DNA of 64,000 nt, taken from contig NC_042997.1 of the NCBI RefSeq assembly GCF_006345805.1, positions 190,712,001-190,776,000 on the forward strand. The letters are read 5' to 3'. The DNA comes from Octopus sinensis (taxonomy: Eukaryota). Shown here one piece after another: positions 3,678 to 46,902 of the stretch (the first letter of the stretch is position 1; each line of letters opens with the position of its first letter). Under the pieces are notes generated by a model. It saw nothing but the letters and a program-made list of their open reading frames with translations. It did not search any database and was not told where the DNA came from. The translations under genes were made by a program, and so were the position numbers.

Positions 3678-3713
3678 TATTATTATTATTATTACCGTTA
3701 TTATAAATATTAA

Positions 3714-3905
3714 GGCGGTGAACTGGCAAAATCGTTAGCACGACGGGCAAAATGCTTTAGACCATCTTTACGTTCTGAGCTCAAATTCCACCGAGGTCGA
3801 CTTTGCATTTCATCCTTTCCAGGTCGATAAAATAAATACATGTTGAGCATTGGGGTCGATGTAATCGACTCATTCCACTATCTCGAATTTTCTGGCCTTA
3901 TGGCA
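3714..3905 (+). mobile_element. SINE family B, tail variant B1
   Basis: A-box-like tggcaaaatcgttag, B-box-like gagctcaaattcc, core gtcgactttgcatttcatcctttccaggtcgataaa. Preceded by (ATT)n. Confidence 0.85.
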
Positions 3906-3939
3906 AATGAAGAAATGAGTAATAATAATAATAATAAAA

Positions 3940-9487: not shown

Positions 9488-11665
9488 GTAACTCAAAAAA
9501 TTTGCTTTCTTTAAAATGAATTTGTTAAGAAAAATTAGATACGGTAAGTCTGAGATGAGCTATTTTAAAAATACACGATAAACATAGCTAGAATGCCGTC
9601 TTTCTTGTGTCTACTCATTGGAGACTAACCAAAGGGTACGAAGTTACAAAAACGCCTAAAATTTACAACTGTTATAACATGTAGGAACAATATTCCTCCG
9701 TTGACACTTGGGATATTTCATACTTATCACTTCATCATATAATATCACATTGTGCTATAATCATGGTTTCATTTAAAAGATGGGTTAATACTAATCTCAT
9801 TGCCTTTATGATATTTTATAAATTCAACAAATCTTACACGCCATTTTAATATTAGCTTTTGCAGTACAAAGCAATATATCAGATTTAGGTTTGTTACAGT
9901 TAATCAAGTCCTTTCTCGCTACCGATTTTAGTCACTTTCCATCCAACTTTGCCGCCCACTATTCCTGGAGAGGTCGCAGTGGATAGAGTCCTCAGGCGCC
10001 TTGATCTCAGAGCTGTCCCTATCGAACCAATTCACAATATCAAAATAAGAAGTATTTAATGGTCCTGTGCTAGGTTTAAATATTAACCATAAGTCATCTA
10101 GTATGCTTTGCCTCCTATTTTGTCGCGAGGATAAACTATATTGAAAGAAAAGCAGGAAAGCCAATATTATTTTGAAATTATTAGGGTAACAACTTCTCGA
10201 AAAAATGTGAGAATGTGGTTTACTATACCATTAAGAATAAAGCTTCGCCTACTACAGAAGTCCAGTAGTCGTTCAAAATCTCTTTCCTTTTACAAGCTGC
10301 TTGTTGATACTATTCAAATCAAACTGATACTATCTACACTTGCCAGCTGGTTGCTCTACCTTTATAGATAAGGAACCGTTAATTTTAAGACCATTTAAAG
10401 TCAATATTGAGGTTTGCATTTCAGTTAATATTTAGTATTCTGATTTTTTACGTATACATCGATATTGAGATATTTATTTTCTGGTTGGAAAAGAGTGCTG
10501 GTATTCGTGCCTTCCCTGGGGCATTAATAATGTAAGAGAAGTTATTAAAATAGGTGTTTACAACGTACTCCCAATAAGACAAGACAACATTATTCTAGCT
10601 TAAATAGATTTAAAATACACTTCTTTAATTAAATATAATCCTCATAAAAAACGCACCAACTCAATGAAAAAAAATGGTTATTGGTAATTTTAAACAAAAT
10701 GCCACTTAAGACTTTCGCGAGTTTAGTTATAAACTCATTAAAATATCGTGTATCAATAACTTTCTTCAGTTCTGTACCCTCCATTTTTTGTCCTTTGTGA
10801 AGTAAAGTTTTCTCCCTCTTAGCTTTTGAGCGATTTCAGTTTTCAAACTTTTAAATTAAAGTATTTCTGAAGCTATAATTGAACAATTATCGATCGCTTT
10901 TAATCATTTATTTCATTCTATATTCCCCCAGTAAAATAGGTCGAGGGAAGTTTTGTGGAAAAATTATATTAAAACGAAATTAAATCAGAACAATTCATAA
11001 TTTAGCCATTAAAGAAGATCTAAAGACGCTTTACGCTGACTAGTTTGCAGAAGTACTGCTTCTGAAAAAATATATACAATGAATTAATAACTAGAGAAAC
11101 GGGAGAATTTGGTGAACAGAAAGAATTTAAGGGTAAGATTGGTCTTTAAAAGAAGACGACGGTGTCTGTGTGTATGTGTGCCTCTGAAGCTTCCAGGGGA
11201 ATTTAATAAAATTGATAAGTTCATGTCAGATGAGGAGAAGATGACTTTTCCTTAAATATATTAAAAATGGAAATACTACCTGCCATGAGGATATATTTTT
11301 CAGAAATATATTTCTTTTTAAAAAAAGAAATGGGAAAAGCAAATAGTGTAAAAAGAAATATTAAGGCAGAAGGGAGTGTAGATAGCTACATGATAAAAAA
11401 AAAAAAGATACACATATATGCACATTGCCAGAGCAAAAGCAGGTAACGACACAAGGCTTCACAACATAAAAAGGCCATATAAATTAACAAAATTGAAAGC
11501 AGAAGAATGGAATAATATAATGATATGAACTAAGAGAATACAAATGCCATTTTTATTCGTTGTCGAAAATGGGTTTCTTCAGATTCTTAAGAAGAATAGT
11601 TTTGCAAGTAATGTCAATGCGATGGGGTTTCGGTCCCCAGTCATAGCTACGGTATTAAACTCATG

Positions 11666-12083
11666 GAAGTCGGTGAGCTGGCAGAAACGTTAGCACGCCG
11701 GGCGAAATTCGTAGCCGTATTTCGTCTGCCACTACGTTCTGAGTTCAAATTCCGCCGAGGTCGACTTTACCTTTCATCCTTTCGGGGTCGATAAATTAAG
11801 TGCCAGTTACGCACTGGGGTCGATGTAATCGACTTAATCCGTTTGTCTGTCCTTGTTTGTCATCTCTGTGTTTAGCCCCTTGTGGGTAGTAAACAAATAG
11901 GTATTTCGTCTGCCGCTACGTTCTGAGTTCAAATTCCGCCGAGGTCGACTTTGCCTTTCGTCCTTTCGGGGTCGATAAATTAAGTACCAGTTACGCACTG
12001 GGGACGATGTAATCGACTTAATCCGTTTTTCTATCCTTGTTTGTCCCTTCTGTGTTTAGCCCCTTGTGGGTAGTAAAGAAATA
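11666..12083 (+). mobile_element. SINE B2, head + two bodies, 15-bp TSD
   Basis: TSD ggtattaaactcatg at 11651-11665 and 12084-12098. Second body restarts at gtatttcgtctgccgctacg. Confidence 0.9.
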
Positions 12084-12405
12084 GGTATTAAACTCATGAG
12101 TTTAATACGATTGCAAATAGAAACAATTTCATTTATTATCTGTTGTGATTTTGAATTTCTTAACAAGAATTTGCAATAAGTGAGATGTTAACTAAAGCAG
12201 TATTTTTCATTATTGGAATTAATTATTCCCTTCAGTAGATCATCTTTCATATAAAAATAACCCAAGACGTTTATGGTCTGTTCGGGATAAATGGATGAAA
12301 TATTGATACTTTTAAATATTTTCTTTATCTATTTCGCACGAAAAAAGGCGTTGGAAAGCGGAGAATGGTAGTGACAGGATAATTGAGTAACAACATTTGG
12401 TTCGT

Positions 12406-13570: not shown

Positions 13571-14582
13571 AAGTTTATTACAGTAAAACAAAATTCGTTT
13601 CACGAATCTATCCGATGTTTTTAGCCTCTAAGTACAAATTCTATCGGATCCTCTGCGCCTTCTCTCCAAGGTAGATTGAGGATAAATAAAATATGTAAGC
13701 AGCAGGAGCACTATGAATATGACAAGTGTATTATATTTTTTTTTTACTTACTATTTCTAAACATTAAGTCCTACAATCAATGAATGCAGCCTGAAGGCGT
13801 ACGTTTTTGCAGTAAGAAGTTGATAATCCACCGTTTTTCTTTAAATCGGTTTACCAAAAAGAATCAAGCAATTGACTCTCTCACATCCATGAAATAAATA
13901 TTGATTGACGCCAAATTATAAGGAAATCATCCATTTTTTAAAATCTAAAGTTTGTTTGGAGTGGAGCTTCATCTGGTGAACGTCATATAGGTAAATGCAA
14001 TCATTTAACAAAACAGTACAACATATTTTGATTTGTTTGTTTGCTTTTTTCAACAAGATTTTATTGGAAATGTCAATCATTGAGTTCTTTTGGCTTTCCA
14101 GCTGAAATTTTTTTCTGAAGGTATATATCCTCAAAACACTAAACTGACAAGTATTTTATATTTTATTTTTACAATCAAAATTCATTTTTAACATGATTTG
14201 ATTAATACTTGCTTTGATAAAATTTAGTATAAATGTTGACTTTTAACATGATTTTTTTTTTATATAAATAGCTTTAATAAATGAAGTTTTAAAACATGTG
14301 TGTGTATATAGGACGTGTTCAAATTTAATAAGAATTTCATTTTTACAAGAATTTATGTAAATGGAAGTTATTATTTGTCACGGCATAAATCCGTTTAGAA
14401 TTTGTGGGATGCCAATTAAGTAACAATTATTTCATGATGTTTTAAATGTCTACAAGGGAAAATCAGAAGTTGTGATGTGCCTGCATTTCCCCACAGATTA
14501 ACGGTCCAGTAACTCCAAATATTAACCTCTTGTAATCTCTTTGATGATGTTATTTCAGCTGTTGTTTTAGAATTTACAGCAT

Positions 14583-14648
14583 ATATAAAGATGGACGAAA
14601 AGCCGCTTAGCATTTTGCCCGGCGTGCTAACAATTCTGCCAGTTCAGC
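14583..14648 (-). mobile_element. SINE B head fragment
   Basis: gacggacgaaa-like motif followed by ccgcttagcattttgcccggcgtgctaacaattctgccag. Confidence 0.7.
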
Positions 14649-14965
14649 GCTTTAGTGATCCTATAAATATTGTAAATATAAAACCTCAAATTAAAGGGCC
14701 CATTGATATATATATATATTCTATTATCAGGTAAAGTATAATTCTATATTCTTTATACTGATGTAATTCCGAAACGCGCGTCCATGGATGACCAGATATT
14801 GATTGATTTTCGTTACTTCTCTCTGCCTGTGCGGATTGTTCTCAAGTATTTTGGTTTCTCTGGGAGTCCCTTTTTAAAGTAGAAGAAATAACTAAGGTTT
14901 TTGGCTGCTATTTCTAAATTTCGGTATGTGGTAAAGCAAATCTTTGCTGAACCCTAATTATTAAG

Positions 14966-15017
<52 letters not shown>

Positions 15018-15025
15018 TATATATA

Positions 15026-15157
15026 TTAGAAGAAATGAGGTACTCAGAAATCTGGATGGTTTTATATTTACAGATATTTATTAGTATGTTACATGTTTTT
15101 ATATATCATATATTGATATAAAACCATCCAGATTTCTGAGTGCCTCATTTGTTCTAA
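15026..15157. mobile_element. Short MITE with ~42-bp TIRs in a (TA)n tract
   Basis: ttagaagaaatgaggtactcagaaatctggatggttttatat versus atataaaaccatccagatttctgagtgcctcatttgttctaa (2 mismatches). Confidence 0.85.
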
Positions 15158-15754
15158 TATATAATACCTGTACATCATCTCCAAACCTTCAGACAGACAG
15201 ACGTTTATGAATTTGTGTTGCAAGATACCTGATGTGAAACCGTGTGCTGAAACAGATATTTTTATATTTCGGGATGGTATTTTCTTTTTTTTCTTTTTGC
15301 AAATTAAACATATGAACTATAAATTCGTTCTTGACTCGTTTATTTCTGTTCTTATTTCATCTTATAGACTACAGAATGGATTGAACGGAAGAGGAGGACA
15401 CACGTGGGAGGAAAGTATCGCTGAAGAAGTCACAGATGAGTGACCTAAGATTTCCGGACAATAGACATAAGATAAAATTAGAACAGTAATAAACAAGTGA
15501 AGAACGAATATATAGCCCGTGGGTTTATTTGATAAAAAAAATGACCGTTCCGAAATATAACAATGTGTGTGTGTAACTCATGCCGTATATATATAGACAG
15601 GGCAAATTTAAATATTTAAATATTTAGATTAAAATAAGAATTGACGAAAATGCTTAACCGATTGAAGGAAGGAAAAAATTATGGACGACACCGCTAATTA
15701 ATACGTTTGACACATCGTTAATTAGCATAATAGCATAGCCTGGATAAAACATGG

Positions 15755-22639: not shown

Positions 22640-22974
22640 ACATACCTACACACACACACATATAAATATATACGAATACACACACATGCACGCACGCACA
22701 CACAAACACATACACATAACTACAATTTTGCTACGTGTAAATACATTAAACAGTATATTATGCTTCTAGCGGGTGCAATGACTGATAGTCGTATCAGATT
22801 CCCCTCTATGTGGATGGTCATATTTCACGCTATATGAAAGCAAATTTCATAACCATGAAACCTAAACGCTGTCTATATATCTATGTAATCTAGGAAGTAA
22901 TAAGCACTGTATGAAAAGACATTTACAGGTAGTAACGGATATAGTTAGTCGCTCTCGTTTCCAGCTTTTCTTCT

Positions 22975-23590
22975 TATTTCGTTACTACCCACAAGGGGCT
23001 AAACTTAGAGGGGTCAAAGAAGGACAGACAAACGGATTAAGTCGATTATATCGGCCCCGGTGTGTAATAGGTACTTATTTAATCGACCCCGAAAGGATGA
23101 AAGGTAAAGTCGACCCCGGCGGAATTTGAACTCAGAACGTAGCGGCAGACGAAAGACGAAGTACATATTTTCTTTACAAACCACAAGGGGCTAAACACAG
23201 AAGGGACAAACAAAGACAGATAAACGGATTAAGTCGATTATATCAACCCCAGTTCGTAACTGGTACTTATTTAATCGACTTCGAAAGGATGAAAGGCAAA
23301 GTCGACCCCGGCGGAATTTGAACTCAGAACGTAGCAGCAGACGAAATACGAAGTACATATTTTCTTTACAAACCACAAGGGGCTAAACACAGAAGGGACA
23401 AACAAAGACAGATAAACGGATTAAGTCGATTATATCAACCCCAGTTCGTAACTGGTACTTATTTAATCGACTTCGAAAGGATGAAAGGCAAAGTCGACCC
23501 CGGCGGAATTTGAACTCAGAACGTAGCAGCAGACGAAATACTGCTGAGCATTTCGCCCGGCGTACTAACGTTTCTGCCATCTCGCCACCT
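22975..23590 (-). mobile_element. SINE B2, one head + three bodies (~192-bp period)
   Basis: Two of the bodies share private variants (cgacttcgaaagg, tcaacccc, agcagcagacg). The third differs. Confidence 0.9.
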
Positions 23591-23802
23591 TTCCAGCTTT
23601 TCATCTATGTTCCTGATAGAAGCAACCACAGACCAGTTTAAAACACGAAAATGTCCACCACAAACAAAAGGCCTTGATTCTTTGGAATTCCAGTTTTAGA
23701 TATGATAACTAACACACGCTTCTGTATTTGCGTTAACAACTCTGAAAACAGTATGGTTGACATTAATTATTTTCTTACTATGATAGGCACATGGCTATCT
23801 GT

Positions 23803-24939: not shown

Positions 24940-25368
24940 TCATATTGGTTTCAAATTTTGGCTGAGGGTCAGCAAGTTCAGGGGGAGGTGGGTAAGTCGA
25001 TTACATTGACCCAAGTACTCAGCTGGTAGTTATTTTATAGACCTCCGAAATGATGAAACACAAAGTCGGACTCGGCGGAATTCGAACACAGAACGTAAAG
25101 ACGGACGAAATGCCTACTTCTCTACTACCCACAAGGGGCTAGACACAGAGGGGACAAACAAGGACAGACAAACGGATTAAGTCGATTATATCGACCCCAG
25201 TGCGTAACTGGTACTTATTTAATCGAATCCGAAAGGATGAAAAGCAAAGTCGACCTCGGCGGAATTTGAACTCAGAACGTAGCGGCAGACGAAATACCGC
25301 TAAGCATTTCGCCAGCTCGCCGCCTTCAGACGGACGAAATATCGCTATGCATCTTTCTCTCGGGCGTA
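24940..25368 (-). mobile_element. Old SINE B1 interrupted by a younger B2 copy (25112-25327)
   Basis: 13-bp direct repeat agacggacgaaat at 25099-25111 and 25328-25340 brackets the B2 copy. Old head remnant lies beyond 25340 and the old B1 body below 25099. Confidence 0.85.
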
Positions 25369-27792: not shown

Positions 27793-28189
27793 TGTTTCTT
27801 TATTAGCCACACAGGGCTGCACACAGATAGAACAAATTACAAGGTAGAGCTTTTCTTTTGAAGGTTTAAAAAAAAAAAAAAAAAAAAAAAGAAGGGGGAG
27901 TTTCGATCAAAAGGGATCGTAAAAGGAGAGAAAGAGGACAAAAGAAAGGGGGGGTTAAAAAAAAAAAAAAGGGGGAGAGGAAAAAAAAATTGATCAATAG
28001 GGATCGTTATCACAGAAATGTCAATATGAAGTGTAAAGGGGAGGACAGGTGAGGTTTACCCGTGGAAAGAAAAGCCTACGGAAAAGACCACGGTAACCTC
28101 GGTCAATGAAGTCACATTTTATATTTCTTTTTTTTTTTTTTTTTTTTTTTTTTTGCAAATAAGCAACTCTCTGTTTTCGATTTCTGAGT

Positions 28190-31100
28190 TCATAGGACTA
28201 TGCTCAAGGTGGCTTCGTCATTCATACGTGCCATTCTTGCTACATTCACCCATCTTTTTTTAAAACATTCGCTAGACAAAACTTGCCTCTCTACTCTCAC
28301 TTTCCTTTTCAAGTGGTACTTGAAGAAGTTGATGAGAGATTGACCAGAGAGGAAAGTGTTTGTCTCCAATCCTTTCAGACGCGTCCACCAGATACATTCT
28401 TTCGCCATAGCCACAAGGATGTATCTGGTGGACGCGTCTTCCTTCCCGTTTGAAGGAAGGAGGCGTGACAATATTGACGATAGACTCAGCTGATAAACCG
28501 ACTCGTCCCACACGTGACAGCAGTTGTTCGACATAAGCCCACAGGTCGAAATTGTTGGACACTAAACGAGTGCGTGCAGAACGGTTTCGTCGCTCTGACC
28601 GCATCTCGGGCAGGTCGGCCCCGTGTTTCTCGAGCCGTGTCTGTAGAGCTTATCCCGAACGGGTAGCGCTTCTCGGTAGCACTGCCAGGCCAGGGATCTC
28701 TGGAAGTTGTCCATGGGCCCTGGCCCGAAAGTCGTCCCGAACAGGCGGTCAGGTACTCCTCGTCGACGTCCAGGTTCGCCCCGAGCTCGTCGTCGTACCC
28801 CCCCTCCACTAAACCCCTATAGAATGCTTTGGTTGTGTTGAAGTCACTTAAGGTCGACCCAGGACGGCAGAGTTGCTTGAGAGCAACGCGACACTCGCGG
28901 TGCATTCGCCCTTCCTCGGCCTCTTTTTGATCCACGACTGCAGTTCGGTCATGGAGACGAGCTGCGGGAAAGCGTGCCTCACAAACGGCGACCACACCTG
29001 TTCACCGTCGTCTACATAGAGCCAGAGATGTCGCAGTCTCAGCGCGTGTCTGTGCATCATCAACCACGGCATGCCCAGCCCTCCTTTTAACGGGTGTTGA
29101 CAGCAAATGGATCGCCTGACCATCGGGACGCATCCTTTCCACAAGAAGCGAAAGAGGATGCGTTGTAGTTTGGTGATGGTAGGGTCGGGACAAGGTACGA
29201 CGGTCAGGCGGTAGTAGATGACGGACGCGATGTACGTGTTCGCCACCTCCGCTCGACCTTTTAGGGACAGTTTCCTCTCGGCCCATTGCCGGGCGAGAGT
29301 GACCACCCTACTCGTTATCTCGTTCCAGTTCTTCTCCACTTGGAGGTCCGGACCAAACCAGACCCCGAGCAACTCAACCGGGCCGTCGGTCCAGCGTCCC
29401 ACGACGGAGGCGCTGGTGGACGGCATGGGCTTGCTTCTCCAGGTGCCTAGTCGCAAGCCCACTGACTTTTCCCGGTTGATTTTCGCTCCTGTCACCGCTT
29501 CGTAGTTTTTCAGTGTCTCGCCGACCAGCTCGATGTGCTCGTGGCTAGACACTATGACGGTGACGTCGTCCGCGTATGCAGACACGCTCGTCCCGCATCC
29601 CAATTCTCGCGGGATGCCCCTTAGAGTCGCCAGCTTCCGCAGTAGTGGCTCAAGAGTCAATACGTATAGAAGCGCCGAGAGGGGGCATCCCTGACGGACC
29701 GAACGTGCAATGTCGAAAGGTCTCGATAGATGTCCATTTACGCGAATTACCGAACGGATGCCTCTGTACAAGGCAGCTATCCAGCCGCGGAAGACGGGAC
29801 CGAAACCAGCCGCTCTCAGGACTGCCTCCAAGTATCGATGGTCTACCCTATCAAAGGCTTTCGATTGATCCAAGTTGATCAGGGCCCCACCCATGCCAGG
29901 TTCGTTAACTACCCTGTCTATGATGTAGCGCATCAGATGGAGGTTGTCATGGATGGTCCGGCCTGGCACGGCGCATGTTTGCGCCTTGTCGACCAGTTTC
30001 TCGATGACAAGCGCCAACTTCTTGGCTAGCACCTTGGCCAAAATTTTCAAGTCTGCATTAATCAGAGTGATGGGCCTAAAGTTATCTATTACATTTCCCT
30101 TGTTTAGATCTTTCTTCAGCAGTGTTACGGCTCCTCGGCTCACAAAACCAGGAATGCTCCCGTTTTGCTGCCAGTTTCAGTACACCGCCGCCAAGAGATC
30201 TCCAAACAAGTCTGGCATACAATTGTAAAGCTCGTAGGGTAGACCATCCAAACCCGGTGATTTGTCCCTCGAGCATTCTGCCATCGCTTCCCGCACTTCC
30301 GCCGCCGTGATGGCACCTTCGCAGCACCCTGCCCTTCTTGTCGAGAGTCGTGTAGGCTATGTAGGTAGGCACTGAAGTCCACCCTACGTTCTTGCCCTCC
30401 ACTCGTTCCGAACAGTCGGGCAAAATGCTGCTGAAAGGCCTCACACATTTTACTTGGCTCGAGCAATTCGCGCCCCTGTTCATCTACCAGTGACCGAATG
30501 GTGGCTTTGTTGCCCTGTTGCGCCTCTGCCACCCGGGCCTCTCTCGCGGCTCCAACACCTTCGTTCCTTAGAGCACGCATCCTAGCTCTGACAGCACATC
30601 CTTCGTGTTTGGCGTTGAAGTGCTGGTCGAGGGCCAACCTCGCCGCCAAAACGTCGGATGCGATGCCGCTTCTAATTGCCTCTTCTAGCTTCTTAACTAG
30701 CTCACCCTCTACTCTATTTCTATCTATGGCTAGTGCTTTGCTGTACCTAATCGCTTCTGCTTTTACTGCTCTCTTGAGGGCAAACCACCATTTGTTGTTG
30801 ATGATGGCTCCCGTCAAAGCCCTCTTTACTAGTGTGCTAATCCGGTCTCTGAAAACTTGTCTCGATGGAAAGACGCGTTTAGTTTCCAGTATCCGGGACC
30901 CTGCCTAAGTGTCTTACCTAAGTCTAGCGTACATGTCACAAGTTTGTGATCCGTGTAGCTGACTATGTGGAATTGTGGACATCCTATGCTATCTCTATCT
31001 ACTGTCCTACACAGTATCCTATCTAGATACGATCTCGACGACCCGATGCGGTTGCTCCATGTCCACGTTGGCGCATTCGGGTGGTCTAGTCGGAACCTGT

Positions 31101-31625
31101 CAGACAGTTGAAAGCGTCTGAGCAGGTCTCTGAGGCATTTGCATCCCCGTCTATTCCTATCTCTACCCACGTAGTCTACATGCGTGTCCAAGGTAGCATT
31201 CCAATCCCCCACTAAGAGTAAAGGACGAGACGTTCCAAGAAAACTTCTAGACGTTGAAAGAAATCCGCCCGACCTGTTAAGGGCGGTGCGTAAACTGATA
31301 CGAGTCGAAAAGCGCACCCATTGCTGCCGTCGACATCCAGGACGACCAGTCTACCCTCCGGGTCTACGAATATTGTCCTTACATTGAGATCCAGACTCTT
31401 GTGAAAAAGTACCGCGGTGCCACTACCGCCCATTCTCGGCAGACAGGGGGAAAAAAAAATGTTGAACTGTCCGCCAAACATGGTCTTTAGGGCCCGCGGA
31501 TTGTGGAGTCTGGTCTCGCTTATGGCTATGATTTCTAACTTATGTGACTTTATGTCATTTAAGAGGTACCCTTGTTTCCAAGGGGACCCCAAGCCACGCG
31601 CATTTACACAACCAATCTTGATCAT
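28190..31625 (-). pseudogene. Tx1-like LINE ORF2 (AP endonuclease, reverse transcriptase, C-terminal CCHC), disrupted
   Basis: IGCVNARGL, ISETRL, VGDWNA, SYLDRI, TDHK, WKLNAS; KSPGLDGLPYELY; FRPITLIN, LDQSKAFDRVDH, SVRQGCPLS, AYADDV; CPRCGQSDETVLHALV*C. Several frameshifts and at least two in-frame stops. Confidence 0.92.
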
Positions 31626-31639
31626 AGTTCTAATGAATT

Positions 31640-33653
31640 AGAATACAGAGGGTTACTTACTGCTCGAAAGTTTTTGCTTTCTCCTCCGTTGGTTTGTCCT
31701 CGAGAAGGTCCCAGTACAGTTTCTTTGTGAGATATTTTTGGCATTTACCAACCGCACTGGGGAAAATGCCTTTGAGTGTGTGGTGCAGACTTTTGGAGAT
31801 GTGTAATATTTTGATGTGGTCTGGTGGTGTTGTGTATGGGTGATTGTTTGTTTTATGTCATCTTCTGTTATGTTTGTTTTTGATTGGATTATTCCATCAA
31901 TTTGTGTTTTTGGTGTCTATGGCTGTGAGCATGTTTGCTGTATATGTTTTTGTGGTGTTGGTGTGGCTGTTGTTTGCGTTGGGTTTTGAAATGTCTTCGG
32001 GAGATGTATTTCCCCCTGCTTTGTTCGTGTTTGCATTTGGTTTGGTTGTGTTTCTGCTCTTTATTTTCCTTCTTTTTGTAGCTATTTGCCATTCCTCACT
32101 GGTTTCGTCTCTCCGACGAAATTCTGAGGAATCAGAAGGGGGTAGGGGTATGTTGTGGGCTTCTATGTATGTCTGTGTAAGTGGTTGTGTTGTTGTTTTC
32201 GTTGTTGTTGGTTGTTGAGTGTTTGTGTGTTGAGTGCGGTATAAGGGATGGGGGATCAGTTTGTGTGTGTTTTCTTTGTTTTTCTGTTCCTTTGGGTTTT
32301 GCTGTTGATGGTGGTGTTGGTATTTTTTCAGGTGTCGAGTGGTTTTTGGTTGATGACGGATTAGCTTGGTGTGCTTCTCTTGTCGTCTTCTGTGTTGATG
32401 GTGGTGTGGGTAGTAGAGCTTTTTTTCCGGAGTGCTTTGGTTGTGGTAGTGGTTGTTGTTGTTGCTCTTGGTGTGCAGTGGTTGGGCACGTCTTTTTCAA
32501 GTGTGTTTCGCTTCCACACAAATAGCAGCGTGGTCGCCTGCCCTCTACCACTATATAGAGTTTGTAGCCTCCTGGCAGTTCTATAGCGGTGGGTATCTTC
32601 TCTCTTGCTGCTTCATCCAATTGAAGCAGGAATTCGATTGATTTGCCCACATAGTCTTTCTCTCCTAGAACCGCGATTTCCAGGATGTTTGTCTCTGACA
32701 TTGTCTCTGACATTTCAAAGCAGATGGCAGAGACCAACCATTGTGTTTCGACATCAAATGGTATGTTTTTTATTTGGACTTTCGTGACCCTTTTGTTTAA
32801 ATAGACTGGTATCATTACCAAGTCGTCCGAATGCAGCTCCAATGTGGAAAAACGTTTTGCTAAACTTTCGTTGAGGAAACGTACTTGGACTGTACCAAAT
32901 TTGTTTCCCCAACTGATATATTCCTTGGAGTCCCATGCAGGACGAAGGCATTTATCGATTTTTTCCTGCGGTGCATTTTCTGTTCTTCTTGTTTTTTTGT
33001 TTATTACTTTATAAATTATTGTTTTTTTTGTGTGTTTTCCACGATGTGTTGTGGAATATGAAGGTGCAATTTGTCTCCTTCTTTGGAGAAGAGTGCCTTT
33101 GTGCGGTTTATCTCTTGTGTGGTGAATGTTACAATTGTTCTTTTTTGTTTTGTTACGTCCGCAAAATTCGTTTTGAATTTGGCAGTAGAAGTGTTATTGT
33201 GGCAGTGTTAATTGAAGTCATGGTAGTGGTGTTGGTGTTGGCGGTATTAGCAGCAGAAGGCTTGGATGTAGCATTTGACGTCGTAGTAGTGGTGTTGGTG
33301 TTGGCGGTGTTGTCTTTGGTAGGCGGCTTTGTGCCAATTTCGTTGTTGTTGTTGTTGTTGGTGGTGATGGTGGTGGTGCTGGCATTCATGTTTTCGTTTG
33401 TATTCATTTTTGAAATCCCTTTCTCTCTGTCCCTTTATTATCAACAAGTGGTGGGGAGTGAGGGGAAATCTAAGTTAATGTCTTTGGTCGCGGCGATGGT
33501 GAATGCGACGTTAGATTTGTTGTTGTTGTTGTGGTAGTGGTGATGGTGGTGACAGCGGTGTTCACGCTGCGATGTTTAGCACTAGTGGTAGCAATAGTGT
33601 TTTGCTACCGTCTGCATGACTGGCGGGCTAGCCACGTGGTTTCTAGTTGCCAT
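31640..33653 (-). pseudogene. Tx1-like LINE ORF1 (gag-like), frameshifted
   Basis: ATG at 33653. T/N-rich low-complexity N-terminus, RRM-like FGTVQVRFLNESLAKRFSTLELHSDDLVMIPVYLNKRVTKVQIKNIPFDV, zinc knuckle CYLCGSETHLKKTC (ORF 32132..32842), P/T/Q-rich C-terminus. Confidence 0.8.
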
Positions 33654-36388: not shown

Positions 36389-36455
<67 letters not shown>

Positions 36456-36486
36456 GTTGTTGTTGTTGTTATTATTATTTTTATTA

Positions 36487-36700
36487 AGACGGCGAGCCGG
36501 CAGAATCGTTAGCACGCTGGACGAAATGCGTAGCGGTATTTCGTCCGTCGCTACGTTCTGAGTTCAAATTCCATCGAGTTCGACTTTGCCTTTCATCCTT
36601 TCGGGTTCCATGAACTAAATACCAGTTAAGCACCGGGGTCGATGTAGTCGACTGAATCCCTTCTCCCAAATTTGAGACCTTGTGCTTCCAGCAGAAAGAT
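36487..36700 (+). mobile_element. SINE B1
   Basis: gacggcgagccggcagaatcgttagcacg..gagttcaaattcc..gtcgatgtagtcgac. Confidence 0.85.
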
Positions 36701-36864
36701 TGTTATTATTATTATCATTATTATTATTATTATTATCATTATTATTATTATTATCATTATCATTATTATTATTATCATCATTATTATTATTATTATCATC
36801 ATTATTATTATTATTATCATCATTATTATTATTATTATTTATTATCATCATCATTATTATTATA

Positions 36865-36895
<31 letters not shown>

Positions 36896-37024
36896 TATTA
36901 TCATTATCATTATTATTATTATCATCATTATTATATTATTATCATCATTATTATTATTATTATCATCATTATTATTATTATTATCATTATCATCATTATT
37001 ATTATTATTATCATTATTATTATT

Positions 37025-37110
<86 letters not shown>

Positions 37111-37322
37111 AGCGGCGAGTTGGCTTAATCAATAGCTCGCTGCACGAAATGCTTACCGGTATTTCGTCTGCCGTTACGTTCTGACTTCAAATTCTGTCAA
37201 GGTCGACGTTGCCTTTCATCTTTTTGGGATTGATAAATTAAGTACCAGTCAAGTACTGGGGTCTATGTAATCGACTTACCCCTCCCCGAAAATTTCAGGC
37301 ATTGTGCCCATATTAGAATGGA
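37111..37322 (+). mobile_element. SINE B1
   Basis: gcggcgagttggc..gtatttcgtctgccgttacg..cccctccccgaaaatttcaggcattgtgcc. Confidence 0.85.
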
Positions 37323-37372
37323 TTATTATTATTGTTGTTGTTGTTATTATAATAATTATTATTATTATTGAT

Positions 37373-37613
37373 CGCGTGGCTTAGTGGTTAGGATGTCAGC
37401 ATCATGATCATAAGATTGTGGTTTCGATTCCTGGACGGGCGACGCGTTGTTTCCTTGAGCAAAACACTTCATTTCACGTTGCTTCAGTCCACTCAACTGG
37501 CAAAAATGAGTAACGCTGCGATGGAGTGGTGTCCAGTCCAGCTGGGTAACACATACGCCATAGAAACCGGGAAACCGGGCCCATGAGCCTGGCTAGGCTT
37601 TAAAAGGGCGCAT
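37373..37613 (+). mobile_element. SINE family C
   Basis: gtggcttagtggttagg..ggtttcgattcc; CORE-like ccttgagcaaaacacttcatttcacg; gcgatggagtggtgtccagtccagc; tail gggcccatgagcctggctaggctttaaaagggcgcat. Confidence 0.87.
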
Positions 37614-37776: not shown

Positions 37777-37858
37777 CATCATCATCATTATTATTATTTT
37801 TATTATTATTATCATCATCATAATTATCATTATTATTTTTATTATCATCATCATCATA

Positions 37859-37903
<45 letters not shown>

Positions 37904-38100
37904 GCAGCTGGCTAGCAGAAACTTTAGCACGCCAGGCAAAATTCTTAGCAGCAATTTGTCCGAGTTCAAATTCTGTCGAGGTCCACTTTGTCTTTCATCC
38001 TTTCGAAGTCGATAAAATAAGTTCCTGTTGAGTGCCGGGATCAATGTAATCGATTAATCCCTCCAACGAAATTGATGGCCTTGTACCAACATTTCAAACC
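37904..38100 (+). mobile_element. SINE B1, diverged
   Basis: ttagcacgccaggcaaaat..gagttcaaattc..ggccttgtaccaacatttcaaacc. Confidence 0.8.
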
Positions 38101-38823: not shown

Positions 38824-38935
38824 ATAAATTAAAATAAATTAAAATAAGCCGCAACCATTAAAAATAGTTGTAAATCTGGAAAAAATGTATTTAAGAAAGT
38901 CAACAAATATAAAATAGAAGCGGATGTATCATATA

Positions 38936-39275
38936 TATTTCTTTACTGCCCACAAGAGGCTAAACATGGAGGGGACAAACAAGGACAGACACAGGGATTA
39001 AGTCGATTACATCGACACCAGTGCGAAAATGGTACTTTATTTATCGACCCCGAAAGGATGAAAGGCAAAGTCGGCCTCGGCGGAATTTGAACTCAGAACG
39101 TAAAGACAGACGAAATACCTATTTCTTTACTACCCACAAGGGGCTAAACACAGGTGACAAACAAGGACAGACAAACGGATTAAGTCGATTACATCGACCC
39201 CAGAACGTAACGGCAGACGAAATACGGCTACGCATTTCGCCCGGCGTGCTAACGTTTCTGCCAGCTCGCCGCCTT
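38936..39275 (-). mobile_element. SINE B2, head + two bodies of different sequence variants
   Basis: Junction aaagaaataggtatttcgtctgtc on the minus strand. Flanked by ggatgtatc(a/g)tat direct repeats. Confidence 0.87.
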
Positions 39276-39622
39276 AAGTGGATGTATCGTATAATTGTCA
39301 GGTGGATGGAGAAACAAATCGTTGAAACTTGATAGAAACAAGTCACTATCATGGTCAATACCTGACAAAACCTGATAAAAGTTCAGATATTTATTCCTAT
39401 TTCTTCACTCACTTCACTGGCCCCAACTCAAAAGATGCAAAGTCGTTGCATTAGCGACAGTATCAGCGCTACTTTAAAATTGAATTGTTCAAATCTTTAA
39501 TTTCCTTCGTTATCTATGTTCACTCTGCGTTCTAATTCCCCATCTACTATCTCTAACACTTCAGTCAACTTCTTAGATGTCTCCATCCATCGTCATTTAC
39601 CATTACCACCTGTCTATTTGAT

Positions 39623-42070: not shown

Positions 42071-42076
42071 TATCAA

Positions 42077-42308
42077 GGCGGCGAGCTGGCAGAATCGTTA
42101 GCACGCCGGGCGAAATGCGTAGCCGTATTTCGTCTGCCGTTACGTTCTGCGTTCAAATTCCGCCGAGGTCAACTTTGCCTTTCATCCTTTTGGGGTCGAT
42201 AAATAAAGTACCGGTTATGCACTGGGGTCGACGTAATCGACTTAATCCCTTTGTTTATCTTTGTTTGTCCCCTCTATGTTTAGCCCCTTGTGGGCAATAA
42301 AGAAATAT
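42077..42308 (+). mobile_element. SINE B2 monomer
   Basis: Full head. Tail ctttgtttgtcccctctatgtttagccccttgtgggcaataaagaaatat. Confidence 0.92.
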
Positions 42309-43172: not shown

Positions 43173-45339
43173 CCCTTTCACGCTTATTCGTTCGTTCCAC
43201 TCTTCGTTCTTTCTTTCCCCTTCTCTCACATTTCTTTGCCTTCGCTTCTTGCTCACTTTCCCTCCACTTTTCACTTCGCAGTGTCCCTGTCAATTTTTCT
43301 CGCCCCTCCTTAATTCTTCTGTCTCTCTGCTTCTACTTCTCTCTTTTCTCTTCTCTTCCCACGTACCTGGCGTTCGGCCAAGCCTCTTCTTTCTTTCTTA
43401 GTCTGGCCGTTGTCCGTGCAACATCGATATTCCTCCCTGTGTTTGTGAAATAGTCAATCCCTGCCGTAAGGCTTCATTTCCACACACGTCCGTTTTTTTT
43501 CCGTCCTTGTTTTTGTATACATTCGCTGCTTTCTTCCAAGGAATCTAATGCTCTTAGCCTAGTTTTTCCTTGGGACTGGCCAGATTAGAGCAATCTCAAG
43601 TATAATCAGCCGAGAGCGTAATCAATTCTAATAATAATTAGCGTGCTGTGTAGCATAAATTTAAACAGAAAATTATAAACACAGTTCTGGGGGAGAATCA
43701 CAGTTTTACGAAGTGAAACTGTTGTGTTGTGATGATCTTTCTTAGATAACAAATTATAGTGTTTTTCAACATCTTGCTAACCTGGTCGAGACTCAATTTT
43801 ATGTATTTGTTTTGCACGATTCGTGTTATTAAATCGTGTGTTGAAACAGATATTTTTATACTTGGGGATGGCCATATTTTGCCGATTAAACTCACGCACT
43901 ATATATTTGGTCTTCACTTCAGCTTTATTTTTGTTCTTTATTTTTGTCTGATATCTTTCTTCACACATCCTGTGAACTTTTCAGTGATTCACCATCTCAC
44001 AAAGGCAAAAATTTGCAAATAAACCCAAAAGTAATCCCGCAAAACACAATCCATATTCTGCATCACACAAAATTTTTTTTAATAACACAAATCACATGAC
44101 ACATATTCTGAATTTTAACAATACTCTTCTCGTAGTAGACACTCAGTTACCTCCGTTAAGCTATCTCGACAATTAAACGTAACGCTATAAAGAACCTGCA
44201 GAACAACGAAACAAATCCTGCAACACAGCAAATTAGATATGACAAAAATATTTAATTCCTTCCTACAAAATCTCGGTTTTCTGAGTTCGGTAAAGTGACA
44301 AAGGGTGCATTAACTAGGAATTCCGTCAAGATCCTTAATTTTTCTGGTCATATGGTATTATTATGAATGCTTTCAAAAGTTTTTTCTTTCATAGACATTT
44401 ATTCATGTCATTCGTAAGTGTTCTTCATGTTTGAAGGGTTACATCAAAATATTATATTTCTCAGCTAGGCATTAGTTGCATCTTTTTCACGGATTGGAAT
44501 ATATTGCAGTTTCAGCTATGTAATTAATAACAGAGTATTATATTCTTCATAGCTGAGAATATAATGGATTAAGAAAGATATAGCTTATGTCTGGATGAGA
44601 GATATACTATAAAGCAGCTCTTCGAACTATTTAACAAAATACCCGAAATACAAACAGGAATAAACACAAATGCATTGAAATAAAAAGATGGAATATATTG
44701 TGTCTCAAGATCTGAAGGAGTGAGTATGCTGTATGTACCTGGATATGAATGTGTGCTTCCTTAGCGCTATATAGATCCTTTCGATAGCAACCGTGATTGT
44801 TATCTTACTTTTATTGACCAACACTTTTGTAAGTCGTTTGCTATTAAGCAAACAGGATGTGACATTGCCGCAACAGCATTCCAGTGATTTTTAATATAAA
44901 TACACACACACACACAACACACACACACACAATTACACAACGTGTACACTCGTATACATGCATATGTGTCACTCATATGTGGAGACATAAAAAGACACAA
45001 AACCAGTCCCAACCCAACTCTATCAACGCTGGAAGCATCATCAAGTCTTCCGAATTTATCCTTGGCCCTCAACCTGAAAATCCTCTGAAAAAAAATTGTT
45101 TAAGCTTAATCGTCGATTTTTATTGTATCTGCCAGAACACCTCCCTAACGCTCTGCAGAACGCAATATTGGACGTCCTATTAATTGTATGGTCCACCTGG
45201 TAATGAATTGAGAACATTCAAGATATCAAGCACGTCTTTGAGCAATCCAGGGCAGGTCTTTTACAGTGACTAACTGTCTCTACAATGTCCTACCCACTTT
45301 CCAGGAATGTCTACTGAAGACGTAGACTCAATGATAATA

Positions 45340-45725
45340 ATGGTTTCAAATTTTGGCACAAGGCCAGCAATTTTTCACAGGAAGAGGAAGTCGATTGGAA
45401 CGATCCCAACTCTTGACCGGTACTTATTTTATCGATCTAGAAACGATGAAACGCAAAGTTGGCCCCGGCTGAATTTAAACTCAAAACACAAAGCGGTCTG
45501 CCAGCTCGCTGTCTTAGCCTCAGTGATAATGATATTGGTTTCAAATTCTGACACAAGGCCAGTAATTTCGGGGAATGGGGGTAAGTGCTCAACTGGAACT
45601 TATTTTATCAGCCCCGAAAGGAGTGAAAGGAAAAGTCGACTTCGGTGGAATTTGAACTCAGAACGTAAAGACGGACGAAATGCTGCTAGGCATTATGGAC
45701 CGGCATGCTAAAGACTTTGCCTTAG
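45340..45725 (-). mobile_element. Two adjacent diverged SINE B1 copies
   Basis: Each begins (plus strand) ggtttcaaatt..gcacaaggccag. The second has cggtggaatttgaactcagaacgtaaagacggacgaaatgc. Confidence 0.75.
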
Positions 45726-46682
45726 CGTCAGTGATGATAATATCAACTATAATTTATTTTACAAAAAGTTCAAATAGACACTTTGACGGTTTTGTATTTT
45801 GCAAAAAAAAAATTGAAAAAAAAACAGACTTTTAGCAACGTCCATGGCTCTTGACCAGTAATCGAAACCTGATGTTAATATCTTCATTTACGTCATCACG
45901 ACATAGCCGTGGCTACTGTTATCTTTAAAGATGCCATATTCATTGTCTTTCTCATCATTATCAATTCAGCGTCACCACCTTCACCAACGTCATTGTCTCG
46001 TGCACTTTTCAAAGAAAATGCAAGGAAGTTTATATGGCATCGTAATTTAGACGGAGTTTGCAGGCAATGATGGTTGTGATAAACCGTCTTGAGTTTGGTG
46101 GCGAGGAGAGGAACTATAAAAATATAGTCTGAATGAATTAAAATCGTTTCAACTCACGCACATATACTCATACACATGCAAACACACACATATACACACA
46201 AACACGTACACACACGCACAAACACAAGCACACGCACACACAGACATAAGCATACATACTTGCATGCATCATCGTTTCATGAATATCATTTTAAAATTAT
46301 TTGTATATAATATTTATTTATACAGTTTCTCAATACTATTTCGATACACAGTTCTCGGGAGTCCTTATTTATACTATTTTATTCATTCATTCATTCATTT
46401 ATTCATTAACGAAGTGGTTGTTTGTTGGTTTTTGTGTTCTTTTTTTTTTACTGTTTGTTTTTCTTTTTTCTTTTTCTTACTTTGTTGTTTTGATTATTCT
46501 TTTTTAAACACCGTCTGTTTATATAGCTTCATACAAATACGTGACAACATAATTTAATGACTAAACATTTTATAAACCTATTGAAACGTAAATCACGCAA
46601 ATATATTACTGGCTTTCTTCAATTAAACTGTGCTTTACTGCTTGCACTACTCAAAGTGCAATATATATGCGTGTATATATAT

Positions 46683-46902
46683 ATTTCTTTACTACCCACA
46701 AGGGGCTAAACACAGAGGGGACAAACAAGGACAGACAAAGGGATTAAGTCGATTACATCGACCCCAGTGCGTAACTGGGGTTATCGACCCCGAAAGGATG
46801 AAAGGCAAAGTCGACCTCGGCGGAATTTGAACTCGGAACGTAACGACAGACGAAATACGGCTACGCAGGTCGCCCGGCGTGCTAACGTTTCTGCCAGCTC
46901 GC
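46683..46902 (-). mobile_element. SINE B2 monomer in (TA)n context
   Basis: atttctttactacccacaaggggctaaacacagaggggacaaacaaggacagacaaag...ctgccagctcgc. Confidence 0.9.

What the first reader, a model, noticed from the sequence alone, without database searches (positions are those of the whole stretch)
24940..25368. SINE B2 inserts into its own family at one motif (GTATTTCGTC), with a clean 13-bp TSD
Seen: a B2 copy (25112-25327) sits inside an older, more diverged B1 and is bracketed by identical agacggacgaaat repeats. That site is the atttcgtc motif of the tRNA-like head. The head-(body)n structures at 11666, 22975 and 38936 all restart at the same motif, so 4 of 6 B2 loci here are nested or concatemeric. 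At 38936 the two bodies are different sequence variants, which argues against simple slippage. Inference: targeted self-insertion, driven by endonuclease preference or by 3'-end microhomology (aaatagGTATT), builds SINE arrays. Sequence-specific targeting is well known for Tx1-clade LINEs.
Basis: partly seen in the sequence, partly recalled or inferred. Interest (0 to 1): 0.7.

Follow-up and report, generated by a model that had tools for sequence, protein, structure and literature searches.

The report
Octopod SINE nests at its hairpin
In this octopus-like genome, a short mobile element has jumped into an older relative at exactly the nucleotide where three neighbouring copies restart as head-plus-several-bodies chains, so the pattern is real, but one 64-kb window cannot show whether it comes from targeted self-insertion.

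Summary
A 216-bp SINE copy (25112-25327, minus strand) lies inside an older, about 20% diverged relative. It is bracketed by a perfect 13-bp duplication (ATTTCGTCCGTCT; 25099-25111 and 25328-25340). Removing the insert and one repeat restores a gap-free head.

Three other loci (11666, 22975, 38936) are head-(body)2-3 chains. Every extra body starts at the same TATTTCGTC motif, so 4 of 6 loci are composite.

The motif is the 3' arm of a 10-13 bp inverted repeat in the SINE head. The break lies at its loop end.

- Each chain has a single outer duplication and no internal one.
- One extra unit (locus 22975) is a 192/192-identical local duplication.
- The five outer target sites are unrelated, so there is no Tx1/R2-like site-specific endonuclease.
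- Each preceding body ends at the exact SINE 3' terminus, so reverse transcription made the junctions.

The junctions are most likely nested insertions guided by homology or structure, followed by re-copying of read-through transcripts.

Precedents exist: the Alu self-insertion hotspot, SINE multimers and SINE-derived satellites. No other sequence from this species was reachable, so the genome-wide enrichment test remains undone.

The parts
25112..25327 (-). It is full length at the 5' end (GAAGGCGGCGAG...) and has a 21-nt internal head deletion. It ends ...GTAGAGAAGTA plus a 3-nt filler GGC (25114-25112).
   Evidence: BLAST to the family; sequence; 12/213 differences from the B2 consensus.
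25328..25340 (-). Upstream copy of the 13-bp target-site duplication ATTTCGTCCGTCT.
   Evidence: Exact match search.
25099..25111 (-). Downstream copy of the 13-bp target-site duplication ATTTCGTCCGTCT.
   Evidence: Exact match search. The same 13-mer is native in the B1 head at 45669-45681.
25341..25364 (-). 5' part of the old host SINE Y ('B1' type, 5'-truncated or decayed), upstream of the insertion.
   Evidence: The reconstructed empty site aligns gap-free to other B1 copies.
24941..25098 (-). 3' part of host Y (body and B1-type tail ...GCCAAAATTTGAAACCAAT), about 20% from the B1 mini-consensus.
11666..12083 (+). Array A. Head plus unit 1 is 11666-11899, the filler GG is 11900-11901, and unit 2 is 11902-12083. 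The junction reads ...AAACAAATA|GG|TATTTCGTC.
   Evidence: TRF gives period 184, 2.0 copies, 94% matches. The units differ at 11/183 sites.
11651..11665 (+). Outer duplication of array A, GGTATTAAACTCATG. The second copy is at 12084-12098 (15/15).
   Evidence: The empty site is unique in the window.
22975..23589 (-). Array B. Head plus unit 1 is 23589-23358, with filler TGTACTTCG at 23357-23349. Unit 2 is 23348-23166, with the same filler at 23165-23157. Unit 3 is 23156-22975. Units 1 and 2 are identical; unit 3 differs at 24/183 sites.
   Evidence: TRF gives period 192, 2.9 copies.
22958..22974 (-). Outer duplication of array B, AGAWGAAAAGCTGGAAA. The second copy is at 23590-23606 (16/17).
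38936..39275 (-). Array D. Head plus a truncated unit 1 is 39275-39120, holding consensus 1-75 joined to 120-234 at 39201|39200. The filler GG is 39119-39118 and unit 2 is 39117-38936.
   Evidence: Unit 1 is 2/153 and unit 2 is 15/184 from consensus.
38918..38935 (-). Outer duplication of array D, TATAYGATACATCCRCTT. The second copy is at 39276-39293 (16/18).
42075..42307 (+). Solo copy E. Its head inverted repeat lies at about 42107-42136 and the motif TATTTCGTC at 42126-42134.
46682..46901 (-). Solo copy F, slightly 5'-truncated. Its 21-bp duplication TATATATACACGCATATATAT is at 46661-46681 and 46907-46927.

Best explanation
What the element is:
- It is a LINE-dependent SINE family of an octopod, with a conserved central domain of the kind shared across animal SINE superfamilies.
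- Its head carries a 10-13 bp inverted repeat (CGAAATGC, a 4-6 nt loop, GYATTTCG).
- Its consensus has no internal run of four T, so RNA polymerase III should read through into whatever lies downstream.

Shown:
- At 25112-25327 a young copy was inserted by target-primed reverse transcription into the head of an old relative. It is in the sense orientation and has a 13-bp target-site duplication that starts at the loop-proximal end of the 3' arm of the inverted repeat.
- In three further loci each extra body starts at that same nucleotide (within 1-2 nt). The preceding body ends at the exact SINE 3' terminus, with 1-3 filler bases (9 in array B).

Inferred:
- Because the joins use the RNA 3' terminus, reverse transcriptase made them.
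- Because each chain has one outer duplication and one head, the chains have one of two origins. Either they are nested insertions whose 5' end was resolved in register against the homologous host head, or they are retro-copies of read-through transcripts from loci built like the one at 25112.
- Local unequal crossing-over then adds units. This is certain for units 1 and 2 of the chain at 22975.
- The site is not chosen by a sequence-specific endonuclease.
- It is more likely chosen by base pairing between the nicked target and the RNA just 3' of the tail. In transcripts of such loci that RNA reads GGYAUUUCGUC.
- The hairpin-prone structure of the site may also help.
For: - Clean 13/13 duplication and gap-free empty site (chance about 7e-7).
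- The breakpoint is the same in A, B, D and C, and the orientation is sense in 4 of 4.
- Upstream units end at the SINE terminus ...GAAATA, the same terminus as in solo copies E and F and in the ENA copy L003.
- Inverted repeat: the minimum-free-energy fold pairs consensus 34-46 with 51-63. Across 13 heads, 83% of cells pair, against 34-53% when the partner is slid.
- There is no T4 run in the consensus.
- Outer duplications are single and their sequences are unrelated.
- The filler GGC in C matches the B2 context GGT|ATTTCG rather than the host's GAT|ATTTCG.
- The outer duplication of A begins GGTATT, the same six bases as the internal junctions of A and D.
- In D, the head and unit 1 are near consensus while unit 2 is decayed (p=0.005), as expected for a transcript that starts in a young copy and runs into an older headless body.
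- Subfamily markers are shared between the units of one array and with monomers. AAATTAAGT occurs in both units of A and in L003. GATTAAATAAGT and GATATAATCG occur in all B units and in the monomer at 25112. So the arrays arose more than once.
- Precedent: Alu self-insertions cluster at one nucleotide, in sense, and are explained by pairing of the tail with the target (PMC2836564).
Against: - There are only six loci, all in one window, with no second individual and no sister species.
- No internal duplication is visible in A or B, so nested insertion there is inferred, not seen.
- The possible hidden 24-bp duplication in D (22/24) is contradicted by the pristine state of D's head.
- The homology-pairing hints rest on two small observations (a 3-nt filler and a 6-nt match). 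The other junction fillers are partly circular, because they abut the host motif by construction.
- The partner LINE and its 3' end were not found in the window, so nothing is known about how it primes.
- The inverted repeat shows little covariation. Its structure was read off the consensus, which inflates the comparison with slid controls.
- RNAalifold did not recover the inverted repeat.
Confidence: 0.45

Rival explanations
1. The partner LINE's endonuclease prefers this site itself. It would recognise either the local sequence or the cruciform or hairpin tip of the head inverted repeat. Every junction would then be an independent nested insertion.
For: - Four junctions lie within 2 nt of each other and all are in sense.
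- The site is at the loop end of an inverted repeat.
- TATTTCG holds the only TAT in the B2 consensus, and three outer duplications start with TAT.
- From my own knowledge: APE-type LINE endonucleases are known to be sensitive to DNA structure.
Against: - The five outer targets share no motif and no inverted repeat. Any preference is therefore weak, yet 4 of 9 junctions hit a site that makes up well under 1% of AT-rich positions.
- Arrays lack internal duplications and second heads.
- D's head does not match the age of D's unit 2.
Confidence: 0.2
2. A few composite (dimeric) master copies amplify as units, as Alu does. The nested copy at 25112 would land at the same position by coincidence.
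For: - Each array has exactly one outer duplication.
- A and D share the identical junction AAATA-GG-TATTTCGTC.
- D's two units have different distances from consensus, as expected if the composite existed before insertion.
- The authors of the mouse B2 and jerboa Dip multimer study say they cannot tell these two origins apart (PMC8466645).
Against: - Subfamily markers group units within an array, and with monomers, rather than by unit position across arrays.
- The junction of B differs.
- D2 lacks the marker that both units of A carry.
- Given a nested insertion into a SINE, the chance that C falls within 2 nt of the array boundary and in sense is about 1% (5/230 x 1/2, my estimate).
- A first dimer must still be made at this position.
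Confidence: 0.2
3. Reverse transcriptase runs off a SINE RNA whose 5' end was created in the hairpin loop by cleavage. It then adds one or two untemplated bases and jumps to the 3' end of a second SINE RNA. The concatemer is inserted as one unit.
For: - It explains one head, one outer duplication, unit ends at the RNA 3' terminus and the extra G or GG at the junctions.
- It explains units of different origin in D.
- From my own knowledge: end-to-end template jumping is documented for non-LTR reverse transcriptases.
Against: - It cannot produce locus C, which has the host head upstream and a 13-bp duplication.
- No solo body-only copies starting at position 52/53 are present in the window.
- No evidence for cleavage in the loop is available.
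Confidence: 0.1
4. The arrays are DNA-level tandem duplications made after insertion, by unequal crossing-over, replication slippage or break repair at the inverted repeat. Retrotransposition plays no role in them.
For: - Units 1 and 2 of B are 192/192 identical.
- A can be produced by exchange between GTATT in its head and GTATT in its own 3' flank, which also explains its GG.
- Unequal recombination is the mechanism proposed for the first step of SINE-derived satellites (PMC10702118).
Against: - D has the same GG junction, but its flank begins TATAT.
- The unit ends of B and D coincide with the exact SINE 3' terminus without flank microhomology.
- B3 against B1 (13%) and D1 against D2 (9%) are as different as unrelated copies, while the outer duplications are nearly intact.
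- It does not explain C.
Confidence: 0.05

Closest known systems
Alu self-insertion hotspot in human (Levy, Schwartz and Ast 2010, PMC2836564)
   Same: A SINE inserts into copies of its own family in sense orientation, at essentially one nucleotide that is not the canonical endonuclease site. This is explained by pairing of the incoming RNA's 3' end with the target.
   Different: - In Alu the site is the end of the A-rich linker, and the pairing is poly(A) with poly(T).
- Here the element has no A tail and the site is in the head, at the tip of an inverted repeat.
- Any pairing would need read-through sequence beyond the tail.
- The Alu case rests on 15,759 events; this one rests on 1 direct and 3 indirect.
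SINE-derived satellites of squamate reptiles (Vassetzky, Kosushkin and Ryskov 2023, PMC10702118)
   Same: These are tandem repeats of part of a SINE with a longer terminal unit that reaches the SINE terminus, that is, head-(body)n. They arise independently in several families, and 'insertion into the same locus' or unequal recombination is proposed as the first step.
   Different: - Here the arrays have only 2-3 units.
- The animal is a cephalopod, and the authors did not know whether such arrays exist outside squamates.
- This window also holds a nested copy with a duplication at the very unit boundary, a link those authors did not report.
Head-to-tail SINE multimers (mouse B2, jerboa Dip, bat Ves; Vassetzky et al. 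2021, PMC8466645) and dimeric master SINEs such as Alu
   Same: A large share of copies sit in tandem (40% of B2, 49% of Dip). The open question is the same: integration next to a resident copy, or retro-copying of a composite template.
   Different: Those multimers are made of complete units joined at the A-rich tail. Here the later units lack the first 51-52 nt and the join is inside the head.
Site-specific non-LTR elements (Tx1 clade, R2)
   Same: Repeated use of one target sequence; a possible role of 3' homology with the target (own knowledge).
   Different: Solo and outer insertions of this SINE lie in unrelated sequences, so the machinery is not site-specific.
Chimeric L1 insertions, in which the nascent cDNA recombines with a resident L1 upstream (cell-culture studies of 2002; own knowledge, not checked here)
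   Same: This would give the in-register 5' join needed to turn a nested insertion into head-(body)2 without a second head.
   Different: It has not been shown for SINEs or for this family. It is an inference only.

Membership tests
SINE (LINE-dependent short retroposon) | Dispersed copies with defined termini flanked by target-site duplications of variable sequence | tested here: met
   Duplications of 13-21 bp surround A, B, C, D and F. They are 15/15, 16/17, 13/13, 16/18 and 21/21.
SINE (LINE-dependent short retroposon) | 3' end shared with a partner LINE | tested here: inconclusive
   No tail-only match was found in the window, and the LINE at 28-32.8 kb does not share the tail. A related tail (...GAGAAATCTAT) occurs on SINE-like and head-less copies in Argonauta locus L002.
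tRNA-derived SINE | Head recognisably similar to a tRNA, with A and B boxes | tested here: not met
   ARAGORN finds 0 genes. Rfam gives no tRNA match at gathering score or at E<=10. Only a B-box-like GTTCAAATTCC can be seen by eye. The motif lies in a 13-bp hairpin that is not a tRNA arm.
SINE superfamily with a conserved central domain (CORE-SINE suspected) | A central block of about 40-65 nt shared by families that have unrelated heads and tails | tested here: met
   The 20-nt word TTCATCCTTTCGGGGTCGAT hits at least 120 metagenome contigs. These share only consensus 93-137 and have different heads and tails. That the block is the CORE domain, as in octopus OR1 (PMC4824008), rests on my memory of the MIR sequence and was not tested.
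Site-specific retroelement (Tx1/R2 type) | Nearly all copies in one target sequence | tested here: not met
   The five outer targets are unrelated.
Self-insertion hotspot of the Alu type | Insertions into the element's own family at one position, in sense orientation | tested here: met
   One direct event (C) and three junctions lie within 2 nt, and all four are in sense. The sample is very small.
Self-insertion hotspot of the Alu type | Pairing of the incoming RNA's 3' end with the target explains the position | tested here: inconclusive
   The hints are the GGC filler in C and the GGTATT start of A's duplication. The canonical tail ...GAAATA is itself not complementary to the primer strand at the site.
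SINE-derived satellite | Tandem repeats of part of a SINE, with a terminal unit that extends to the SINE terminus | tested here: met
   A has period 184 and 2.0 copies. B has period 192 and 2.9 copies. D was shown by alignment.
SINE-derived satellite | Long, homogenised arrays at many loci | tested here: not met
   The maximum in the window is three units. The genome as a whole was not testable.
Dimeric master SINE | Unit-specific diagnostic sites shared by all composite copies | tested here: not met
   Markers group by array and subfamily, not by unit position. Only three arrays were available.

The most novel reading that the evidence does not exclude
A SINE lineage has become self-homing. 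Once a copy sits in front of the head motif of another copy, its terminator-less transcript carries GGYAUUUCGUC beyond the tail. This read-through sequence pairs with nicked SINE heads at the tip of their inverted repeat. New copies are therefore steered to the same nucleotide of other family members. The resulting loci export head-(body)n transcripts. This would be an RNA-guided route from a dispersed SINE to a SINE-derived satellite, seen at its first steps in a cephalopod.
Probability: 0.25. Interest if true: 0.65.

Novelty: new variant of a known kind. Interest (0 to 1): 0.4.

Why it matters
SINEs make up about 11.6% of an octopus genome (PMC13282606). How dispersed SINEs turn into tandem arrays is an open question, raised for squamates in PMC10702118.

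This window holds a nested copy with a clean duplication at exactly the boundary used by small arrays of the same family. That gives a concrete and testable first step. A simple table of 3' junctions in any octopod assembly would settle three things:
- whether the head inverted repeat is a real insertion hotspot;
- whether read-through transcripts spread the composites;
- whether homology or endonuclease preference picks the site.

If the excess is not there, the finding reduces to an ordinary nested insertion plus a composite subfamily.

Tried and rejected
Attempts to reach more sequence of this species all failed:
- A metagenome scan with a B2-specific pattern gave 0 hits.
- A second metagenome scan with the core word gave at least 120 contigs. 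They belong to another animal whose SINEs share only the central domain.
- A viral-contig scan gave 0 hits.
- A protein search with a SINE-encoded peptide gave one 543-nt ENA contig holding a solo copy.
- LINE reverse-transcriptase relatives led to an unrelated ENA assembly without the SINE.
- They also led to Argonauta hians, which has a related SINE with a different head.

Structure and family searches:
- Rfam and ARAGORN give no tRNA or other family.
- RNAalifold did not recover the head hairpin. I therefore tested a named structure instead.

Ideas rejected:
- A single dimeric master for all arrays: the markers disagree.
- Slippage for all arrays: D's flank lacks the microhomology, and unit ends sit at the SINE terminus.
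- A template switch eased by tail/head complementarity: the tail AAGAAATA is the reverse complement of TATTTCTT-like head sequence, but the nascent cDNA would be identical, not complementary, to the incoming tail.
- A hidden 24-bp duplication in D as proof of nesting: the age of D's head contradicts it.

A literature search found no description of octopus SINE arrays.

Full report
**What the window is.** The sequence is AT-rich, full of microsatellites and retroelement debris, and has no tRNA or Rfam hits. A frameshifted LINE with endonuclease and reverse-transcriptase domains lies at about 28.0-32.85 kb on the minus strand. Its best protein relative, at 65% identity, is from the octopod Argonauta hians, followed by cuttlefish proteins. 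So the window comes from a cephalopod, most likely an octopod. The species' own genome is not in any collection I could search.

**The element.** All sequence below is read on its sense strand.
- The consensus runs GAAGGCGGCGAGCTGGCAGAAACGTTAGCACGCCGGGCGAAATGCGTAGCCGTATTTCGTCTGCCG...GTGGGTAGTAAAGAAATA.
- The head is not detectably tRNA-like.
- The central domain (consensus 93-137) is a conserved block. It also occurs in at least 120 metagenome contigs from another animal, attached to unrelated heads and tails.
- This fits a SINE superfamily. Octopus OR1 is listed among CORE-SINEs (PMC4824008). My identification of the block as CORE rests on memory only.

**Check of the observation.** It is exact.
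- The copy at 25112-25327(-) is full length at its 5' end and carries a 21-nt head deletion.
- It is flanked by ATTTCGTCCGTCT at 25328-25340 and 25099-25111.
- The same 13-mer is the native head sequence of the B1 copy at 45669-45681.
- Joining the flanks with one repeat gives a host that aligns gap-free with five other B1 heads across ...GCATTTCGTCCGTCTTTACGTTCTG....
- The chance of such a repeat is about 7e-7.
- The host is about 20% from a B1 mini-consensus and the insert 5.6% from the B2 consensus. The insert is the younger of the two.

**The other loci.**

| Locus | Coordinates | Structure | Junction | Outer duplication |
|---|---|---|---|---|
| A | 11666-12083(+) | head + 2 bodies | ...AAACAAATA-GG-TATTTCGTC | GGTATTAAACTCATG, 15/15 |
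| B | 23589-22975(-) | head + 3 bodies | ...AAAATA-TGTACTTCG-TATTTCGTC (second junction: -TCTTTCGTC) | AGAWGAAAAGCTGGAAA, 16/17 |
| D | 39275-38936(-) | consensus 1-75 joined to 120-234, then 53-234 | ...AAAGAAATA-GG-TATTTCGTC | TATAYGATACATCCRCTT, 16/18 |
| E | 42075-42307(+) | solo | none | not resolved |
| F | 46901-46682(-) | solo, slightly 5'-truncated | none | 21 bp, 21/21 |

- In C the junction is ...AAGTA-GGC-ATTTCGTCCGTCT.
- Four junctions therefore fall within 2 nt of consensus position 52-54, and all are in sense.
- In every case the upstream unit ends at the terminus that solo copies use.

**What the site is.**
- The minimum-free-energy fold of the consensus pairs positions 34-46 (CGGGCGAAAUGCG) with 51-63 (CGUAUUUCGUCUG) around a UAGC loop.
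- Across 13 B1 and B2 heads, 83% of the cells of this helix are standard pairs, against 34-53% when the 3' partner is slid by 1-3 columns.
- Covariation is weak and the structure was taken from the consensus, so this shows a conserved inverted repeat, not a selected RNA structure.
- RNAalifold did not find it.
- The insertion and restart point is the loop-proximal end of the 3' arm.

**What the arrays are not.**
- They are not stacks of complete nested insertions. Each has one head, one outer duplication and no internal duplication.
- They are not copies of one dimeric master. Both units of A carry AAATTAAGT, which the monomer L003 also has. All B units carry GATTAAATAAGT and GATATAATCG, which the monomer at 25112 shares, plus a private CCGGGGTCGAC. 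D2 lacks the A marker.
- They are not all slippage.
  - Units 1 and 2 of B are 192/192 identical, so that step is a local duplication (or an assembly error).
  - B3 differs from B1 by 13% and D1 from D2 by 9%, as much as unrelated copies do, while the outer duplications are nearly intact.
  - A alone could be explained by exchange between GTATT in its head and GTATT in its own flank. D has the same GG junction with a flank that starts TATAT.
- The machinery is not sequence-specific. The outer targets are unrelated.

**What the arrays probably are.**
- The joins use the RNA 3' terminus, so reverse transcriptase made them.
- The consensus has no run of four T. Polymerase III transcripts must therefore run into the downstream flank, and the reverse transcriptase must normally start at a tail that is internal to the RNA.
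- A locus built like C would then give a transcript of insert plus headless host body, ending in a usable tail. Its retro-copy is head-(body)2 with one duplication.
- D fits this. Its head and unit 1 are 2/153 from consensus and its unit 2 is 15/184 (p=0.005).
- The alternative is a nested insertion whose cDNA was resolved against the homologous host head. It gives the same structure and cannot be excluded.
- D's join of position 75 to 120 at a CTG microhomology, with a 22/24 repeat of positions 52-75, looks like such an event. The pristine head argues against it unless the head was converted.

**Why this site.** Two small observations point to pairing with read-through sequence.
- The three filler bases in C (GGC) resemble what precedes ATTTCG in B2 heads (GGT), not what precedes it in the host (GAT). 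This is as expected if the template RNA came from a copy already sitting in front of a B2 motif.
- The outer duplication of A begins with GGTATT, the same six bases as the junctions of A and D.

Three copies of the other subfamily (D2, E, F) are followed by TATAT. Where the duplication can be read (D, F), it starts with TATA.
- Together this suggests that the first bases of the target tend to match what follows the tail in the template.
- The evidence is thin, and for the internal junctions it is partly circular.
- A structural preference for the tip of the inverted repeat is the other candidate.
- Template jumping from a 5' end made in the loop explains the arrays but not C.

**Comparison with what is known.**
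- Alu inserts into Alu in sense at a single nucleotide after the A-rich linker. There are 15,759 such events, explained by pairing of the tail with the target (PMC2836564).
- Tandem multimers make up 40-49% of mouse B2 and jerboa Dip copies. Their origin, by integration or from a composite template, is stated to be unresolved (PMC8466645).
- Squamate SINE-derived satellites have exactly the head-(body)n layout. Their authors propose unequal recombination or insertion into the same locus as the first step, and did not know whether such arrays exist outside squamates (PMC10702118).
- I found no description of this in cephalopods.
- The finding is therefore a new variant of a known kind. The variant features are a head-internal, inverted-repeat-tip position, an element without an A tail, and a nested copy with a duplication at the array boundary in the same window.

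**Verdict.**
- Confidence in the reverse-transcription route (nested insertion, then in-register resolution or read-through re-copying, then local duplication) is 0.45.
- Interest is 0.4. The pattern is clean and gives a cheap, decisive genome-wide test. But the general phenomenon has precedents, and the present evidence is six loci.

Noticed in passing
window 45330-45715 (-): Two diverged B1 copies, one with a large head deletion, lie in tandem. They are separated and flanked by three copies of a 15-18 bp sequence (ATTATCAYYACTGAGKCT). The layout is duplication-SINE-duplication-SINE-duplication. This means either re-use of the same target or unequal exchange between the duplications.
   Followed up: partly
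L002 (Argonauta hians, GCA_054771915.1) 14827-15310: The related Argonauta SINE shows the same three-repeat tandem layout (AGRYCAGCAC repeats). Copy 'c' at 13620-13860 has a duplication, CTATTTCAAGGAA, whose first bases equal the SINE's tail end (CTAT). This is tail-target microhomology.
   Followed up: partly
L002 about 1700-1720 (-): A tail fragment (...TTCTGTGTTCGTTCCTTGTGGCTA) is fused directly to the Argonauta SINE head at GTCAATTTCGTTCTGG. This is a tail-to-head join inside the head, reminiscent of the octopod junctions.
   Followed up: no
L004-L123 (JGI metagenome contigs): At least 120 contigs from host-associated metagenomes carry SINE families of another animal. They share only the 40-45 nt central domain (87-92% identity, a 20-nt exact word) with the octopod SINE. 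This shows deep conservation of that block.
   Followed up: partly
window 12085-12108: The target of array A is the left edge of a perfect 24-bp palindrome, GTATTAAACTCATGAGTTTAATAC. Like the head motif, this insertion site lies at an inverted repeat.
   Followed up: no
window 14585-14652 (-): An isolated B1 head fragment ends at ...CTTTTCGTCCATCTTTA, 3 nt beyond the stretch that is duplicated in locus C. No body follows. It could be a deletion product or a recombination remnant at the same region.
   Followed up: no
window about 28000-32850 (-): A frameshifted LINE with ORF1, an APE-type endonuclease and a reverse transcriptase. It is 65% identical to an Argonauta hians protein. Its 3' end does not match either SINE tail.
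   Followed up: partly
window 3700-3960, 36440-37400, 37850-38100: B1 copies sit inside or next to long (ATT)n/(TAA)n microsatellites. Their tails appear to seed these repeats or to target them.
   Followed up: no
SINE consensus 53-60 and 226-234: The SINE tail (A/C)GAAATA is the reverse complement of the head motif TATTTCGT (8 nt in B3 and L003). The RNA 3' end could therefore pair with the head of the same or another transcript. No role could be assigned.
   Followed up: partly
L003 (ENA ERZ23499442, 543-nt scaffold): This is the only external copy of the family found. It is a solo element, 87.6% identical to the consensus, and lies next to the reverse complement of a different tRNA-like repeat.
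   Followed up: yes
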